From Salpingoeca rosetta (Eukaryota; Protista; Choanoflagellata), in contig JAWQFM010000006.1 in NCBI GenBank assembly GCA_033442325.1, positions 1,671,611-1,735,610 of the forward strand: a stretch of 64,000 bases of DNA, written 5' to 3'. Position numbers and translations under genes: made by a program. The notes under the pieces were generated by a model that saw only the letters and a list, made by a program, of their open reading frames with translations, was not told the DNA's origin and searched no databases. Within the stretch, counting starts at the first letter, position 1, and each line of letters begins with the position of its first letter. Of this stretch, positions 29,986 through 55,526 are shown one piece after another.

Positions 29986-30708
29986 NNNNNNNNNNNNNNN
30001 NNNNNNNNNNNNNNNNNNNNNNNNNNNNNNNNNNNNNNNNNNNNNNNNNNNNNNNNNNNNNNNNNNNNNNNNNNNNNNNNNNNNNNNNNNNNNNNNNNNN
30101 NNNNNNNNNNNNNNNNNNNNNNNNNNNNNNNNNNNNNNNNNNNNNNNNNNNNNNNNNNNNNNNNNNNNNNNNNNNNNNNNNNNNNNNNNNNNNNNNNNNN
30201 NNNNNNNNNNNNNNNNNNNNNNNNNNNNNNNNNNNNNNNNNNNNNNNNNNNNNNNNNNNNNNNNNNNNNNNNNNNNNNNNNNNNNNNNNNNNNNNNNNNN
30301 NNNNNNNNNNNNNNNNNNNNNNNNNNNNNNNNNNNNNNNNNNNNNNNNNNNNNNNNNNNNNNNNNNNNNNNNNNNNNNNNNNNNNNNNNNNNNNNNNNNN
30401 NNNNNNNNNNNNNNNNNNNNNNNNNNNNNNNNNNNNNNNNNNNNNNNNNNNNNNNNNNNNNNNNNNNNNNNNNNNNNNNNNNNNNNNNNNNNNNNNNNNN
30501 NNNNNNNNNNNNNNNNNNNNNNNNNNNNNNNNNNNNNNNNNNNNNNNNNNNNNNNNNNNNNNNNNNNNNNNNNNNNNNNNNNNNNNNNNNNNNNNNNNNN
30601 NNNNNNNNNNNNNNNNNNNNNNNNNNNNNNNNNNNNNNNNNNNNNNNNNNNNNNNNNNNNNNNNNNNNNNNNNNNNNNNNNNNNNNNNNNNNNNNNNNNN
30701 NNNNNNNN
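29986..30708. other. Assembly gap (723 N) flanked by (CA)n on both sides
   Basis: Run of N. Confidence 1.
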
Positions 30709-51253: not shown

Positions 51254-52260
51254 ATGGACTCGCCGTTTGCGTTTGACACTTCTAACCCGTTTGCTGCCGA
51301 GGAGAAAGAGGTGCCGCCGTTCGGTCTTGACATGGTGAGCGGCGCAAGACGAACACGTCGTGACGAGGATGTGGATGTTGGTGTCACATCAAGAAGAACA
51401 GCAGATCCCACACACAGCAGCAGAGCGCATGCTCCGCAAACGCACACAGCAGTACTGACAGTGCCGTCGCCTGGAAAGACAGAGATTGAGATTGAGGACA
51501 GCGAAGAGGACATGCCGCAGCAGAGGCCGGGTCCAAGAACGCCGCTGGCAAAGGTGTATGCGGAGATTTGCACATACCCGTGCAACGGCTGGCTCGATTA
51601 CAAGTACGACAGCGAGACGTTTCCCCCAACGTTGAAAGGCCACGTCACGTACAAGAAGTTCCAGAGCATTGTGGAGCAGCTCAACACCATTCGCAAGAAG
51701 TATCGCTGCAACGGCACAGACTACGCTCTCCTCGGTGCGCTACTGTCACGAACTGCTCGTCTGCCTGTGGTTGTGTCTTGTGCGGCCGTGTGGAGGGCGG
51801 GAGTGGTGTTGTTTGAACGTTGTGTGATTCGCTGCGTCGTACGTTGTGTGGTTTGGAGTTTAGCTGCCAGCTCTTGTTTGCAATCCACTTTCTTTGCTGT
51901 GTGCTGCATTCGGTCGTGCGCATCCACCCTCAACAAGCAAGCAAGTTAACGCCTCTTCTCCCCCCTCTCTCTGTCTCTGTCTCTCTCTCTCTCTTCCTCT
52001 GTCTCTCCCACACGCACACACACACAATCACACACAATCACACTCACACACACGTCCCAATGATGCCAGGTGCGAGTGTGGGGCTTCTTCCCATGATCCC
52101 GTTTATGATGCGCAAAAAGTCTCGGGCGATTGAGCGCCGCAAGGAGATGAAGGCCGTCTTTGCGCAGTTTGAATACGAACACGAGACCCTGCGCATGCGC
52201 ATCGACAAAACCACGGGCAACCTCATCATCGAAACACACCCATCGGTCCTCTACGGCTGA
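51254..52260 (+). CDS. Small Erf4/GOLGA7/CHIC-like membrane-associated protein; 3 exons
   Basis: FPPTLKGHVTYKKFQSIVEQLN resembles the Erf4-domain start. It is followed by a hydrophobic hairpin (YALLGASVGLLPMIPF) and a terminal LIIE strand. There is an N-terminal NPF. Confidence 0.5.
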
Positions 52261-52581
52261 CTCTTGCAATATGCTTGTCGTTGAGCCTGAATGCCTCACG
52301 TCATTGCCCATGGGTTACCTGGATTATATTCCACATTGTTATGTCACATATTATGTCTCTCTCGCTTGCTTCCTCTTCCTCTCATCATCATCATCCTCAT
52401 CTCTGTGCTTCTGTGGAGTGCTTGCGACACAGAACCTCTCTGTTGTTGTCCCTCTCTTGTCCAACAAAGTCCTGCGTGGCCGTGGTTTTTTTTTTTTGCT
52501 GTCGTGCGCAACACACGTGTGTGCAGCCGCGCCAGCCAGAACACCCACGATACAACAATACCCACACCACAAAACACCACC

Positions 52582-54675
52582 ATGGTGGCGACCTCAAGCT
52601 GTCGGCTATGTGCCAGTATGATGGCAAGGCGGTGCACCACCACCACCACCGCCACCACCACCGCTGCTGCCGCCGCAACAGCAACAACCATTCGCGGCAC
52701 GGGTCGCTTTTTGAGTCAGATCGCACGACGACACCCACAAATACAGCAGCAGCAACACCAGCAACACCAGCAACACCAGCGACGCCACCTGGCAAGAGCC
52801 ACGGCGATGCTGCGGCGATCGACAATGCCGTTGTCAACCAGCACTGCACGCTGGAACGCGGGCAGCAACGCCAGCAGCAACAGCAAGGACGGTGAGAAGG
52901 AGGCCGGTGGTACGGGGAGCCTGACGTCGTTGCTGGAGGGCATCATGGAGGTGAAGAAGTCGGCCAGCGCGCAGCAGGAGAACAGCTTCAAGCAGCTGGA
53001 GCAGCTGTTCAAGGACAACGACAAGGACCACTTCCTGATCCCCATGGGCGGCGCAGAGGAGATTGGCATGAACTGCAACCTGTACGTGCACAAGAACCGC
53101 TTCCTCATGGTCGATCTCGGCGTGAACCTCACCAACATCGGCAACGGCTCCACGGCCATCATGCCAGACCTCGACTACGTCATGCGCAACAAGCACAAGC
53201 TCGTCGCCCTGGTCATCACCCACGCCCACGAGGACCACATTGGCGCCGTGGCCACGCTCTGGCCAGACCTCAAGTGCCCGCTCTACTGCACAAAGTTCAC
53301 GGCGGAGATGATCCGCGCCCGCCTCCCGCCAAACGTCAGGATCCCTCCCCTGCACATCATCGACCAGAAGACAAAGGTGACCACAAAGCCCTTCAGCTTC
53401 ACCCTGCAGCACATGACGCACTCCATCCCGGAGTCGCACGCCGTCATCCTGCACACGGAGCAAGGGCACATCGTGCACACGGGCGACTGGAAGCACGACT
53501 CTGCACCCTTGCTGGGCCCGCCATTCGACTACGCAGCCATGAACAAGCTCGGCGAGGAAGGCGTGCTTGCCGTTGTCGGCGACTCGACCAACGCCGTCGT
53601 GGAGGGCGAGTCGGTGCCCGAGTCCGAGGTGCAGCGCGGCCTGCGCGAGCGCCTGCTGAAGGTGGAGCCTGACCGGCAGTGCGTGCTCACCTGCTTCTCG
53701 TCCAGCGTCTCCCGCGTCGGTATTGCGCTCGACTGCGCGCCGCAGATGAATCGTCGGCCAGCGCTCATGGGCCACGCCATGCTCACCACCAGCGGCATTG
53801 CGCACGACTGCGGCTACCTGCCCACACTCCCCTCCACCCGCGGCCTCCACGAGGTGGTGACCAAGCACGCGCCCGCGCAGTGCCTGATGCTTGCCACGGG
53901 GTGCCAGGGCGAGCCCGCTGCTGCGCTGTCACGCATGGCGTCTGGCGACCACCCAATTGTGCACCTTGGCCCAGACGACGTCGTCATCTTCTCGTCGCGC
54001 GTCATCCCCGGCAACGAGTTGGACGTGCAGCGCGTGGTGAACCAGCTCAAGCGCCGCGGTGTGCGCATCATCCGTGATGGCGAGGACGGGGTGCCGACAC
54101 ACGCCTCTGGCCACGCATATCGGGGTGATATCCGCATGCTGCTGTCGCGGCTTCGCCCGCAGATGGTCGTGCCCGTGCACGGCGAGTACCTGCACTTGGA
54201 GGAGCATTGCAGCCTGGCGCGGGAGCAGGGGGTCAAGCACACCATCATCCCTCGCAACGGCAACGTCATCCACCTCCACCCGCACGAAGGCCCGAAGGTT
54301 GTTGGGCAGGTGAATGCAGGTCAACTTGTGATGGACGGGCGACTGCTGCGTCGCATGGACTCGCCCATCATGCAGGATCGCATGACGCAACAGGCGCAGG
54401 GGGCGTGTTTCATCACCGTCGTCCTGTCTGCGGACAACCAACTCCTTGTTCCGCCCGTGCTCTCCCACCGCGGCCTCATTGACAAGACAGAGACGCAGCT
54501 GCAGCAGCAGTTCGTGGCGCTCTCCGACATGCTTGGCGAGGAGCTGTCTGGGCTCAACAGTCCGCCGGACAGCGTGATCCAGGGTGTGGCGCAGGCAGCC
54601 GTGATGGGGTTCTGCCAGCGGCGACTGGGCAAGCGGCCCGTGTGCGAGGTGCACATTGTCAGGCAGAGCATGTGA
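52582..54675 (+). CDS. rnj: Ribonuclease J (metallo-beta-lactamase/beta-CASP) with a predicted mitochondrial presequence; intronless
   Basis: Motifs IPMGGAEEIGMN, THAHEDHIG, HSIPES, HTGDWK, DSTNA, TGCQGEPAAAL, IPGNE, HASGHA and PVHGE, plus the RNase J C-terminal domain (LGKRPVCEVHIV). Confidence 0.95.
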   Translation: MVATSSCRLCASMMARRCTTTTTATTTAAAAATATTIRGTGRFLSQIARRHPQIQQQQHQQHQQHQRRHLARATAMLRRSTMPLSTSTARWNAGSNASSNSKDGEKEAGGTGSLTSLLEGIMEVKKSASAQQENSFKQLEQLFKDNDKDHFLIPMGGAEEIGMNCNLYVHKNRFLMVDLGVNLTNIGNGSTAIMPDLDYVMRNKHKLVALVITHAHEDHIGAVATLWPDLKCPLYCTKFTAEMIRARLPPNVRIPPLHIIDQKTKVTTKPFSFTLQHMTHSIPESHAVILHTEQGHIVHTGDWKHDSAPLLGPPFDYAAMNKLGEEGVLAVVGDSTNAVVEGESVPESEVQRGLRERLLKVEPDRQCVLTCFSSSVSRVGIALDCAPQMNRRPALMGHAMLTTSGIAHDCGYLPTLPSTRGLHEVVTKHAPAQCLMLATGCQGEPAAALSRMASGDHPIVHLGPDDVVIFSSRVIPGNELDVQRVVNQLKRRGVRIIRDGEDGVPTHASGHAYRGDIRMLLSRLRPQMVVPVHGEYLHLEEHCSLAREQGVKHTIIPRNGNVIHLHPHEGPKVVGQVNAGQLVMDGRLLRRMDSPIMQDRMTQQAQGACFITVVLSADNQLLVPPVLSHRGLIDKTETQLQQQFVALSDMLGEELSGLNSPPDSVIQGVAQAAVMGFCQRRLGKRPVCEVHIVRQSM

Positions 54676-54735
54676 GTGAGTGAGTGAGTGAGTGAATGAG
54701 TGCGTGAGTGAATGAGTGCGTGAGTGAGTGAGTGA

Positions 54736-54788
<53 letters not shown>

Positions 54789-55526
54789 TGTGTGTGTGTG
54801 TTTGGAGGGAGGGGAGATTGGGAAACGGCCACCTTCGTGTACATGTACGTGAGTAGACGTGTGTGTGTGTGCGTGTGTGTGTGTGTGTGTGGGGGGGGGG
54901 CTTTGCGTTGTTGAAGTTGCCGTTATTGTTGTTTCGGTTGTAAACCCTGCCAGGCTCGATGCAAATCATGCGAGTGTGCTCCTTGTTTGCTTGTTTGCTT
55001 GCTTGCTTGCTCTCAACTCGTGCGAGTGTCTGTTGTTGTGCTGCTGCTTTGCTCCTGAACTTCTTATGTCACATCTGACAAGTACATGATTATCAAGACA
55101 CGCCAGTTTCACTCGTATCATGAACACGGCAACATGCTTGTGTACAGCGTGTTGATGGCTCAGTGCATGCGTGTTCTGGACGTGTGTATTCGAGTCACCA
55201 CTGCACTTTGTGAGTGAAGGGTCAGAGGAACAGAAAGAACTCATGACAAGAGAAGCGAAAAAGCACCAGCCCTGGTCGTGCAGCACATGGGGGCTGTCAG
55301 TTACAGTGTCAGAGGCGAAGGTATGAAGAAGGGATAACATGAACATGGAACCGGAGAACAAGGGAAGCAACACAAAAAACGGGGCGTGGTCCAACATCAC
55401 ATCACATCTCATCACGTCGCAGCACGTGGGCGAACAGAGATTTGTGCCTGCAGGCAAGCAGGCCACGGCGACTGCATCATCACATCATGTCACATCGTCA
55501 CAGCATCGGGATGGCATGACATGACA

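What the first reader, a model, noticed from the sequence alone, without database searches (positions are those of the whole stretch)
52582..54675. Intronless bacterial-type RNase J with a mitochondrial presequence
Seen: a single 2.1 kb ORF in an otherwise intron-dense region carries all RNase J catalytic motifs (HAHEDH, HSIPES, GDWK, DSTNA, HASGH, PVHGE) and the RNase J-specific C-terminal domain. It is preceded by a 102-residue extension with 13 Arg, many Ser/Thr/Ala, no Asp/Glu, and a cleavage-like STSTARWNA. Established: RNase J is a 5'-3' exo/endoribonuclease of bacteria, archaea and plastids. Animals and fungi have the CPSF73/IntS11/Artemis beta-CASP families instead. Inference: this is a nucleus-encoded, mitochondrion-imported RNase J in an aplastidic animal relative, which would give that mitochondrion a bacterial-style 5' RNA maturation and surveillance pathway lacking in animal mitochondria. 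The GGxEEIGMN/IMPD/GDSTNA variants look alphaproteobacterial to me, so the gene is either an endosymbiotic relic or a lateral transfer.
Basis: partly seen in the sequence, partly recalled or inferred. Interest (0 to 1): 0.82.

Follow-up and report, generated by a model that had tools for sequence, protein, structure and literature searches.

The report
Choanoflagellate RNase J with mitochondrial-type presequence
Salpingoeca rosetta, a close single-celled relative of animals, carries and expresses an intact bacterial-type RNA-cutting enzyme (RNase J) with an N-terminal tag that looks like a mitochondrial import signal, so its mitochondria may use an RNA-trimming enzyme known so far only from bacteria, archaea and chloroplasts.

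Summary
Window 52582-54675 (+) is one 697-codon ORF in the Salpingoeca rosetta nuclear genome. It encodes a complete RNase J: TIGR00649 E 7e-108, PDB RNase J 1e-81, and an AlphaFold model that matches full-length RNase J structures at TM 0.82-0.86. All catalytic residues are intact.

RNA-seq shows the gene is transcribed and unspliced. The public gene model removes a 226-nt "intron" (52616-52841) and with it the presequence. No read or contig supports that splice.

The first 102 residues hold 13 Arg and no Asp or Glu.

An exhaustive profile search found orthologues in five more choanoflagellates: Barroeca, Hartaetosiga, Monosiga brevicollis, S. kvevrii and Codosiga hollandica. It also found two unnamed eukaryotic sequences. 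All eight have 82-180-residue basic N-terminal extensions, against 11-22 residues in bacteria.

In the tree the eukaryotic sequences form one clade (98/93) inside the alphaproteobacterial-type RNase J group (100/100). They branch deep and the donor is unresolved.

Mitochondrial import and function are inferred, not shown. No paper in the library reports a mitochondrial or choanoflagellate RNase J. Holozoa lack Pet127, the usual mitochondrial 5'-3' exonuclease.

Verdict: a real, expressed gene. It is a new organellar variant of a known enzyme and can be tested directly in a tractable organism.

The parts
52582..54675 (+). RNase J coding sequence, 697 codons plus TGA, single exon
   Evidence: ORF list. 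TIGR00649 7e-108, Pfam and PDB matches. RNA contigs are colinear and no joints were found.
52490..52581 (+). Approximate 5' UTR and transcription start zone, downstream of a T-run at 52476-52490
   Evidence: Depth rises here towards the gene-body level in run X23. An RNA contig starts at 52486. There is no ATG between 52357 and 52581. The start site itself is not mapped.
52582..52887 (+). Presequence-like N-terminal extension, residues 1-102: 13 Arg, no Asp or Glu, rich in Thr, Ala, Ser and Gln
   Evidence: Composition count. Residues 1-50 and 77-111 have pLDDT below 50, and a predicted helix spans 41-79. Bacterial homologues have only 11-22 residues before the core.
52616..52841 (+). The 226-nt GT..AG 'intron' of the public gene model (protein starts MCH|TARWNA). 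RNA does not support it.
   Evidence: The P0001 sequence compared with the DNA. No 52615>52842 joint in X21-X23. An X2 RNA contig reads through the donor site.
52921..53016 (+). Helix at residues 114-145, ahead of the catalytic core, probably part of the mature enzyme
   Evidence: AlphaFold helix with pLDDT 73-97. The segment aligns in Barroeca and Hartaetosiga.
53038..54645 (+). RNase J core, residues 153-688: metallo-beta-lactamase domain, beta-CASP domain, linker and C-terminal domain
   Evidence: TIGR00649 positions 4-541 of 546. Foldseek against full-length RNase J structures gives 557-573 aligned columns and TM 0.82-0.86.
53221..53238 (+). Motif II, HAHEDH (H214, H216, D218, H219), the metal ligands
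   Evidence: Invariant in 49 aligned homologues.
53680..54048 (+). Beta-CASP domain (Pfam RNase_J_b_CASP), residues 367-489
   Evidence: 107.5 bits against a cut-off of 27.
54100..54114 (+). HASGH (H507, S509, G510, H511): beta-CASP motif B and the 5'-phosphate pocket motif
   Evidence: H507, G510 and H511 are invariant and S509 is conserved in at least 90% of 49 sequences. All four are invariant among the 8 eukaryotic sequences.
54367..54660 (+). RNase J C-terminal domain, residues 596-693
   Evidence: Pfam RNase_J_C E 4.4e-4, 21.6 bits, just under the 23.8 cut-off. It is modelled with pLDDT 85-95 and included in the full-length structural matches.
52069..52260 (+). Last coding exon of the upstream, spliced eukaryotic neighbour (stop at 52258-52260). 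Its 3' UTR runs to about 52413-52470.
   Evidence: Loose ends at 52069 carry upstream exon sequence in all four runs. A cluster of molecule ends lies at 52413.
54672..54801 (.). (GTGA)n/(GT)n microsatellite that begins within the stop codon
   Evidence: Tandem Repeats Finder and the sequence itself.

Best explanation
This is a nuclear, single-exon, expressed gene of Salpingoeca rosetta for a catalytically intact RNase J of alphaproteobacterial type. The gene is old in choanoflagellates. Orthologues occur in at least six species spanning craspedid clades, and they form one clade.

The 697-residue precursor carries a basic, acid-free N-terminal extension that most likely acts as a mitochondrial presequence. 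It would be cleaved somewhere between about residues 80 and 112. That would release into the matrix a mature enzyme made of an extra N-terminal helix plus the canonical metallo-beta-lactamase, beta-CASP and C-terminal domains.

There it would act as RNase J does in bacteria and chloroplasts. It would trim 5'-monophosphorylated RNA in the 5'-to-3' direction, with some endonucleolytic cutting. This would mature the 5' ends of mitochondrial rRNAs and mRNAs and clear spacer and intron fragments. Holozoans lack Pet127, which does this job in fungi and many protists.

Shown: gene, expression, absence of splicing, family, fold, conserved catalytic residues, orthologues, alphaproteobacterial-type affinity, composition of the extension.

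Inferred: import, cleavage site, substrates, enzyme activity.
For: Identity of the enzyme.

Nuclear eukaryotic context:
- 100% match to the S. rosetta protein on a 2.48 Mb scaffold.
- A spliced neighbour 320 bp upstream on the same strand.
- No assembly gap nearer than about 30.7 kb in the window.
- The M. brevicollis orthologue lies on a 1.05 Mb scaffold.

Expression and structure: stranded RNA-seq depth is about 10-45 along the ORF, with no joints, and RNA contigs read through the annotated donor site.

Presequence:
- Composition of the first 102 residues.
- Extensions of 82-180 residues in all 8 eukaryotic sequences against 11-22 in bacteria.
- The extensions are conserved in character but not in sequence, as targeting peptides usually are.
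- The N-terminus stays basic from Met1, Met13 or Met76.

Origin: the eukaryotic clade has 98/93 support within the alphaproteobacterial-type clade at 100/100 (quick 84-row tree).

Functional niche:
- Pet127 was not found in this genome.
- It is reported absent from all Holozoa, while choanoflagellate mtDNA has group I introns (PMC9014873).
- RNase J matures chloroplast mRNA 5' ends (PMC3799425).
- It processes a limited set of RNAs, including rRNA fragments, in an alphaproteobacterium (PMC4179960).
Against: - No targeting predictor (TargetP, MitoFates) and no localisation data were available.
- The S. rosetta extension is unusually long and of low complexity (poly-Thr/Ala, Gln/His repeats), which is atypical for a presequence.
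- The transcription start is only bracketed by depth, not mapped. Read depth over 52626-52690 is masked by the tool as repeat.
- TIGR00649 scores 361 bits, under NCBI's 400-bit cut-off. Most genuine alphaproteobacterial RNase J genes also fall under it: only 7 of 41 genomes were over the cut-off.
- No enzyme assay exists.
- Plastid and cyanobacterial RNase J sequences could not be put in the tree.
Confidence: 0.65

Rival explanations
1. The enzyme is real but not mitochondrial. The basic, low-complexity N-terminus would be a disordered tail or a nuclear/nucleolar signal, and the RNase J would act on cytosolic or nuclear RNA.
For: The S. rosetta extension has poly-Thr/Ala and Gln/His/Arg repeats and is predicted to be mostly disordered. 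No predictor or localisation result is available.
Against: The orthologues start with classical mitochondrial-type sequences (MAALRTCFRTLARLPRV, MASARLTGRLVASSLPV, MATFRLSLKALRM, MAALLLRFQ) that lack acidic residues. Eukaryotic cytosol and nucleus already have Xrn1/Xrn2 and CPSF73/IntS11 (established knowledge). The one known precedent for a eukaryotic RNase J is organellar, in the chloroplast (PMC3799425).
Confidence: 0.15
2. The public gene model is right. A 226-nt 5' intron (52616-52841) is removed, translation starts at ATG 52608 (MCH...), and the protein has no presequence.
For: The annotated protein P0001 begins MCH|TARWNA. The boundaries are GT..AG with a GTATGA donor.
Against: No read in three RNA-seq runs joins 52615 to 52842, at a reporting threshold of 3 reads and a gene depth of 10-45. 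An RNA contig spans 52486-52773 unspliced. The resulting N-terminus would be unlike that of every orthologue, all of which have long basic extensions.
Confidence: 0.04
3. The ORF is bacterial contamination or a recent insertion that is not a functional host gene.
For: It is a single long ORF without introns. Its GC content of 0.60-0.65 is a little above the flanks. Its nearest relatives outside choanoflagellates are bacteria.
Against: It lies inside a 2.48 Mb scaffold with a spliced eukaryotic gene 320 bp upstream and microsatellites on both sides. It is transcribed on the sense strand. It is only about 40% identical to any bacterium. Orthologues occur in two other genome annotations and three transcriptomes, and they form one clade.
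Confidence: 0.01
4. Origin rival: the gene descends vertically from the alphaproteobacterial ancestor of mitochondria (endosymbiotic gene transfer). It would then have been lost in nearly all other eukaryotes, not gained later by lateral transfer.
For: The eukaryotic clade branches deep, outside the main group of 28 alphaproteobacterial rows (89/93). It is not nested in any one order.
Against: Among the hits that were checked, only choanoflagellate or choanoflagellate-like sequences turned up in searches of 1.84 and 5.8 billion proteins that include EukProt. That would require very many losses. The deep position may be long-branch attraction towards the outgroup (branch lengths 1.1-1.5).
Confidence: 0.12

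Closest known systems
Alphaproteobacterial RNase J (for example Rhodobacter sphaeroides and Sinorhizobium meliloti Rnj; best hits here are Rhodospirillales-type, such as Rhodospirillum rubrum, Dongia and Azospirillum)
   Same: Same three-part architecture and the same catalytic and 5'-phosphate motifs, including the EIGMN variant. About 38-42% identity over 78-80% of the protein. The tree places it in this group.
   Different: It is a eukaryotic nuclear gene. It has a 153-residue N-terminal addition (presequence-like region plus an extra helix). It evolves fast, with long branches.
Chloroplast RNase J (Arabidopsis RNJ, Chlamydomonas RNJ1)
   Same: A nucleus-encoded RNase J with an N-terminal targeting peptide, working in an organelle of bacterial origin. 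It trims mRNA 5' ends up to protein roadblocks (PMC3799425).
   Different: The host here has no plastid, so the target organelle would be the mitochondrion. The affinity here is alphaproteobacterial, and no plant or algal protein appeared among the best 120 hits. There is no extra C-terminal DNA-binding domain of the kind plant RNJ has (own knowledge). Plastid sequences were not in my tree.
Pet127 (mitochondrial 5'-3' exoribonuclease of fungi and many protists)
   Same: The proposed job is the same: 5' end maturation and intron or spacer clearance in mitochondria.
   Different: The fold is unrelated (PD-(D/E)XK). It is absent from Holozoa, including choanoflagellates (PMC9014873), and was not found in this genome.
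CPSF73 / IntS11 / archaeal aCPSF1 (beta-CASP cousins)
   Same: Metallo-beta-lactamase plus beta-CASP fold and the same metal-binding motifs.
   Different: Similarity is far weaker: PDB E about 1e-4 to 1e-7 against 1e-81, and Foldseek E 1e-20 with TM about 0.5 against E 1e-53 with TM 0.85. They lack the RNase J C-terminal domain.
LACTB2 (human mitochondrial metallo-beta-lactamase endoribonuclease)
   Same: A metallo-beta-lactamase-fold RNase in the mitochondrial matrix (PMC4770246, title and abstract seen).
   Different: It has no beta-CASP insertion, is not an RNase J and is an endonuclease only. It was not compared by sequence here.

Membership tests
RNase J (beta-CASP ribonuclease J family) | Metallo-beta-lactamase motifs I-IV, including HxHxDH | tested here: met
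   H214-A-H216-E-D218-H219, H280 (THSIPE) and D302 (HTGDWK) are invariant in 49 homologues.
RNase J (beta-CASP ribonuclease J family) | Beta-CASP motifs A (Asp), B (His) and C (His) | tested here: met
   D334 (GDSTNA), H511 (HASGH) and H533 (PVHGE) are present. Pfam RNase_J_b_CASP scores 107.5 bits against a cut-off of 27.
RNase J (beta-CASP ribonuclease J family) | Full-length match to the family model | tested here: inconclusive
   TIGR00649 gives E 7e-108 and 361 bits over positions 4-541 of 546, but the curated cut-off is 400 bits. Genuine alphaproteobacterial RNase J genes mostly score 340-400, and only 7 of 41 genomes were over the cut-off. The shortfall therefore reflects the model, not the protein.
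RNase J (beta-CASP ribonuclease J family) | RNase J-specific C-terminal domain after a linker | tested here: met
   Pfam RNase_J_C is borderline (21.6 against 23.8 bits). The AlphaFold model (pLDDT 85-95 there) aligns to full-length RNase J structures over 557-573 columns with TM 0.82-0.86.
RNase J (beta-CASP ribonuclease J family) | 5'-monophosphate binding motif (H-x-S-G-H) | tested here: met
   H507-A-S509-G510-H511 is conserved in all 8 eukaryotic sequences. This is a sequence-level test only.
RNase J (beta-CASP ribonuclease J family) | 5'-3' exonuclease and endonuclease activity on RNA | not testable with these tools
   Needs recombinant protein assays.
Mitochondrial matrix presequence | N-terminal extension relative to bacterial homologues | tested here: met
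   153 residues before the PMGG core, against 11-22 in bacteria. The range is 82-180 in all 8 eukaryotic sequences.
Mitochondrial matrix presequence | Rich in Arg, Ser, Thr and Ala, with no acidic residues | tested here: met
   13 R and no D or E in residues 1-102. In the orthologues the first acidic residue lies at position 24-56.
Mitochondrial matrix presequence | Amphipathic helix | tested here: inconclusive
   The highest 18-residue hydrophobic moment is 0.70, at residue 37. AlphaFold predicts a helix at 41-79, but with pLDDT of only 44-76.
Mitochondrial matrix presequence | Positive call by a trained predictor, a cleavage site, or experimental import | not testable with these tools
   TargetP, MitoFates and DeepLoc are not available here. 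No localisation data were found in the paper library.
CPSF73 / IntS11 family | Best match to CPSF73-type models and structures | tested here: not met
   aCPSF1 model 52.9 bits against a cut-off of 580. PDB E about 1e-4. Foldseek TM about 0.5.

The most novel reading that the evidence does not exclude
The gene is a vertical relic of the proto-mitochondrial RNA-processing machinery. On this reading the first mitochondria used the endosymbiont's RNase J. The gene moved to the nucleus, and choanoflagellates are the only sampled eukaryotes that kept it. It would then have been lost on the animal stem, as animal mtDNA became compact and tRNA-punctuated. Its deep branch, outside the main group of sampled alphaproteobacteria, would be real and not a long-branch artefact.
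Probability: 0.1. Interest if true: 0.85.

Novelty: new variant of a known kind. Interest (0 to 1): 0.62.

Why it matters
RNase J is treated in the literature as an enzyme of bacteria, some archaea and chloroplasts (for example PMC9014873). I found no paper describing it in mitochondria or in choanoflagellates.

If the protein is imported, choanoflagellate mitochondria have a bacterial 5'-3' RNA trimming and decay route that animal mitochondria lack. That would fill the gap left by the absence of Pet127 in all Holozoa.

It would add a datable gain (before the craspedid radiation) and a loss or absence on the animal side to the story of how mitochondrial gene expression changed at the origin of animals. 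It would also be a clean case of a bacterial gene acquiring a targeting peptide.

S. rosetta can be transfected and edited, so localisation and knockout tests are practical.

A smaller but concrete result: the public S. rosetta gene model for this locus appears wrong at its 5' end and hides the presequence.

Tried and rejected
- **Bigger tree.** An 84-row tree under the site-heterogeneous model did not finish in two 300-s runs. I used a quick LG+G4 tree of the 84 rows and a careful PMSF tree of 43 rows.
- **Plastid and cyanobacterial RNase J.** I could not obtain these sequences with the tools. An algal origin is argued against only by hit ranking, not by the tree. The outgroups came from plasmid and chromid records: Arthrobacter, Nonomuraea, Bacillus, Listeria and Acetoanaerobium. 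The archaeal row was used only in the quick tree. The Mycoplasma row was dropped as partial.
- **Other decay enzymes in this genome.** PNPase gave only exon-sized weak hits and SUV3_C gave none, and the SUV3_C control did not ring. Both are inconclusive. The Pet127 search found nothing, and its control also has no eukaryote. There I rely on PMC9014873.
- **Neighbouring ORFs.** Pfam found nothing on seven of them.
- **Published HGT list.** The M. brevicollis HGT list (PMC4046809) holds no entry by this accession. It lists one 'metallo-beta-lactamase, gammaproteobacteria' entry (GI 167525833) that I could not map to XP_001747251.
- **Extra look-ups.** Twenty long or offset hits of the exhaustive search were checked. 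Besides the choanoflagellates, only bacterial or unnamed metagenomic proteins came up. The other roughly 130 listed hits were not looked up.
- **Earlier scan notes.** Nothing except this same stretch.
- **Complex prediction.** Not run, because no binding claim is made.
Full report
**Where the window comes from.** The ORF's product is 100% identical, over its shared part, to a protein named 'metallo-beta-lactamase superfamily [Salpingoeca rosetta]' on a 2.48 Mb contig. The window is G000:C6:1671611-1735610 of a 55.4 Mb, 68-contig genome.

**The observation.**
- The frame is open from 52291 to 54675 (794 codons).
- Translated from there, the 697-residue protein matches Pfam RNase_J_b_CASP (5e-31), RMMBL and Lactamase_B, and borderline RNase_J_C.
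- It matches the NCBIfam RNase J family model TIGR00649 over positions 4-541 of 546 (E 7e-108, 361 bits).
- Its best solved relatives are all RNase J (1e-81 to 1e-62). CPSF73 and IntS11 reach only about 1e-4.
- The 361 bits fall short of NCBI's 400-bit cut-off, but so do most true alphaproteobacterial RNase J genes (7 of 41 genomes over the cut-off).
- An AlphaFold model built on 49 homologues has mean pLDDT 85.5, and above 90 through most of the core. Foldseek aligns it to full-length bacterial RNase J structures over 557-573 columns with TM 0.82-0.86, C-terminal domain included. CPSF-type proteins reach TM about 0.5.
- The metal ligands and beta-CASP residues (H214, H216, D218, H219, H280, D302, D334, H507, G510, H511) are invariant in 49 aligned sequences. 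H533 is nearly so. All of them are invariant among the eight eukaryotic sequences.
- The first 102 residues hold 13 Arg, 17 Ala, 17 Thr, 11 Ser, 11 Gln and no Asp or Glu, exactly as described.

**Gene structure and expression.** The public protein begins MCH|TARWNA. This corresponds to a start at ATG 52608 and a 226-nt GT..AG intron at 52616-52841, which would delete the extension and change the frame relative to Met 52582.

I laid three stranded RNA-seq runs (raw reads) and one run's RNA contigs on 52054-54671.
- No read joins 52615 to 52842. The only joints listed sit in a CAG/CAA repeat and come with loose ends from other loci.
- One RNA contig covers 52486-52773 colinearly, reading through the supposed donor. 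Another covers 52762-54671.
- That these contigs are RNA is shown by the upstream gene. In all four runs, reads or contigs ending at 52069 continue into upstream exon sequence, so an intron has been removed there.
- Read orientation is uniform (first mate on the minus strand) for both genes, as expected for plus-strand transcripts in a dUTP-type library.
- Depth over 52230-52490 follows the upstream gene. In run X23 it then rises to the fourfold higher level of the RNase J body (about 10, then 17.6, then about 43).
- The upstream transcript therefore ends around 52413-52470, and the RNase J transcript starts around 52490-52560. The part of the open frame upstream of 52582 is the neighbour's 3' UTR.

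Caveats: the tool masks 52626-52690 as repeat, so depth there is not informative, and the start site is bracketed, not mapped.

The ORF is the longest in 46-64 kb by a wide margin. The nearest assembly gap is an N-run at about 29986-30708.

**Relatives.** In the word-indexed search, named bacterial hits among the best 120 are all alphaproteobacteria (Rhodospirillum, Ferrovibrio, Kiloniellaceae, Dongia and others) at 38-42% identity. The best 80 loci among GTDB species genomes are nearly all labelled alphaproteobacteria, with a few MAGs labelled otherwise.

Two eukaryotic relatives appeared at once: Barroeca monosierra (67%) and Hartaetosiga gracilis (41%).

The claim about distribution rests on absence, so I ran the exhaustive profile search of 1.84 billion representatives. 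I then looked up the long or offset hits. This added:
- Codosiga hollandica;
- Monosiga brevicollis (XP_001747251, 'uncharacterized protein', on a 1.05 Mb scaffold);
- Salpingoeca kvevrii;
- an 837-residue protein on a 9 kb metagenome contig.

A Logan transcript contig (P0004) groups with C. hollandica. Its true ORF starts upstream of the called start, with MAALLLRFQ....

A profile of all eight sequences recovered six of them and no new member. A wide gap separated those six (813-959 bits) from the best bacterium (679 bits). No non-choanoflagellate named eukaryote appeared. Only 20 of the 150 listed hits were looked up by name, and clustering at 50% may hide close relatives.

**The extension across orthologues.** Every eukaryotic sequence has 82-180 residues before the conserved P-L/M-G-G core motif. 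Bacterial homologues have 11-22.

The extensions do not align with each other. They do share a character: Arg-rich, with Ser, Thr, Ala and Leu, and the first acidic residue at position 24-56. Starts include MAALRTCFRTLARLPRV (C. hollandica), MASARLTGRLVASSLPV (S. kvevrii), MATFRLSLKALRM (Barroeca) and MLRVAASAIRTGRM (metagenome).

This pattern of conserved property without conserved sequence is what established knowledge of matrix presequences leads one to expect. In an organism without plastids, the mitochondrion is the only organelle with its own RNA.

The S. rosetta version is the oddest, with poly-Thr/Ala and Gln/His repeats. Residues 1-50 and 77-111 are modelled as disordered, with a low-confidence helix at 41-79. 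A confident helix at 114-145 precedes the core, aligns in Barroeca and Hartaetosiga, and probably belongs to the mature enzyme. Cleavage would then fall between about residues 80 and 112.

**Origin.**
- A careful maximum-likelihood tree (LG+C20+F+G4 by PMSF, 43 rows, 554 columns) puts the eight eukaryotic sequences in one clade (ultrafast bootstrap 98, SH-aLRT 93).
- That clade lies inside the alphaproteobacterial-type group, which is separated from Firmicutes and Actinobacteria at 100/100.
- The clade lies outside the main set of 28 alphaproteobacterial rows (89/93). An unnamed metagenomic protein is its weak sister (85/60), and the Holosporaceae symbiont Cytomitobacter sits below.
- A quick LG+G4 tree of 84 rows agrees on both points.
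- Branches are long (up to 1.5 changes per column) and the bootstrap had not fully settled. The deep position may be attraction towards the outgroup. The donor is unresolved.
- Within the clade, S. rosetta+Barroeca, then Hartaetosiga, then M. brevicollis group with strong support. C. hollandica and S. kvevrii are more basal. This is broadly what vertical descent within Craspedida would give, judged from my own knowledge of the species tree and not tested.

The simplest history is one acquisition before the craspedid radiation. A relic of the mitochondrial ancestor is not excluded, but it needs losses in nearly every other eukaryotic lineage sampled.

**Likely function.** RNase J is the common bacterial 5'-3' exoribonuclease and also cuts internally.
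- In the alphaproteobacterium Rhodobacter sphaeroides it is needed for a small set of processing steps, including rRNA-derived fragments (PMC4179960).
- In chloroplasts the nuclear-encoded enzyme trims mRNA 5' ends up to bound proteins (PMC3799425).
- In fungi and many protists, the mitochondrial 5'-3' exonuclease is the unrelated Pet127. That protein is reported absent from all Holozoa, although choanoflagellate mtDNA carries several group I introns (PMC9014873). I found no Pet127 match in this genome, though the control was uninformative.

The most likely mechanism has four steps:
1. The precursor is imported through the presequence pathway.
2. The presequence is cleaved.
3. The enzyme dimerises through its C-terminal domain, as in bacteria.
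4. It trims and degrades 5'-monophosphorylated mitochondrial RNA, covering 5' maturation of rRNA and mRNA and removal of spacers and excised introns.

All four steps are inference.

**Novelty.** The sequences are public but carry generic names. Two full-text searches found no paper on a mitochondrial RNase J (0 papers). Only two papers mention both RNase J and choanoflagellates, and neither connects them. A 2022 paper still describes RNase J as bacterial plus chloroplast.

I rate it a new organellar and lineage variant of a well-known enzyme. It is of real interest to people working on mitochondrial RNA metabolism and on gene gain and loss around the origin of animals, and it can be tested directly in S. 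rosetta.

Noticed in passing
window 52608-52841: The public S. rosetta gene model for this locus (613 aa, starts MCH) uses ATG 52608 and a 226-nt 5' intron that no RNA-seq read or contig supports. The model appears to truncate the true N-terminus.
   Followed up: yes
window 54672-54801 and 54859-54891: A (GTGA)n/(GT)n microsatellite starts within the stop codon of the RNase J ORF (ATG TGA GTGAGTGA...). The GTGAGT units also resemble splice donors. The 3' end of the transcript was not examined, to keep the repeat out of the read tool.
   Followed up: partly
window 29986-30708: An assembly gap (a run of N) flanked on both sides by long (CA)n repeats. It explains the GC dip to 0.16 in the composition profile.
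   Followed up: yes
window 52743-52780: A CAGCAACAC/CAG repeat inside the presequence region attracts many partly matching RNA reads from other loci (loose ends, 'goes back' joints, inflated depth). Two apparent variants, C>G at 52758 and A>G at 52764, are probably from those other loci.
   Followed up: partly
window 51254-52260: The upstream neighbour on the same strand is a spliced gene with no Pfam match. Its stop codon is only about 320 bp from the RNase J start codon, so its 3' UTR and the RNase J promoter and 5' UTR share a very short intergenic space containing a T-run (52476-52490).
   Followed up: partly
P0173 (Monosiga brevicollis) and P0170 (metagenome), relative to window residues about 415-435: Both carry large insertions at the same loop of the beta-CASP domain. 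The M. brevicollis insert is strongly acidic, with poly-Asp/Glu. They may be real lineage-specific loops or unrecognised introns in the gene models.
   Followed up: no
L002 = G000:C4:297689-300973: This is the only other match to the RNase J model in the genome. It is weak (E 1.7e-8, N-terminal 97 positions only, in a 616-codon open frame) and is presumably a CPSF73- or IntS11-type beta-CASP gene.
   Followed up: no
G005 and relatives (Azospirillum-like genomes), e.g. G005:C65:37514-38785: Many of these alphaproteobacterial genomes hold a second RNase J paralogue, and G005 holds a third. These extra copies match only model positions 3 to about 429, so they lack the C-terminal part of the family model. 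Some also appear on plasmids or chromids.
   Followed up: no
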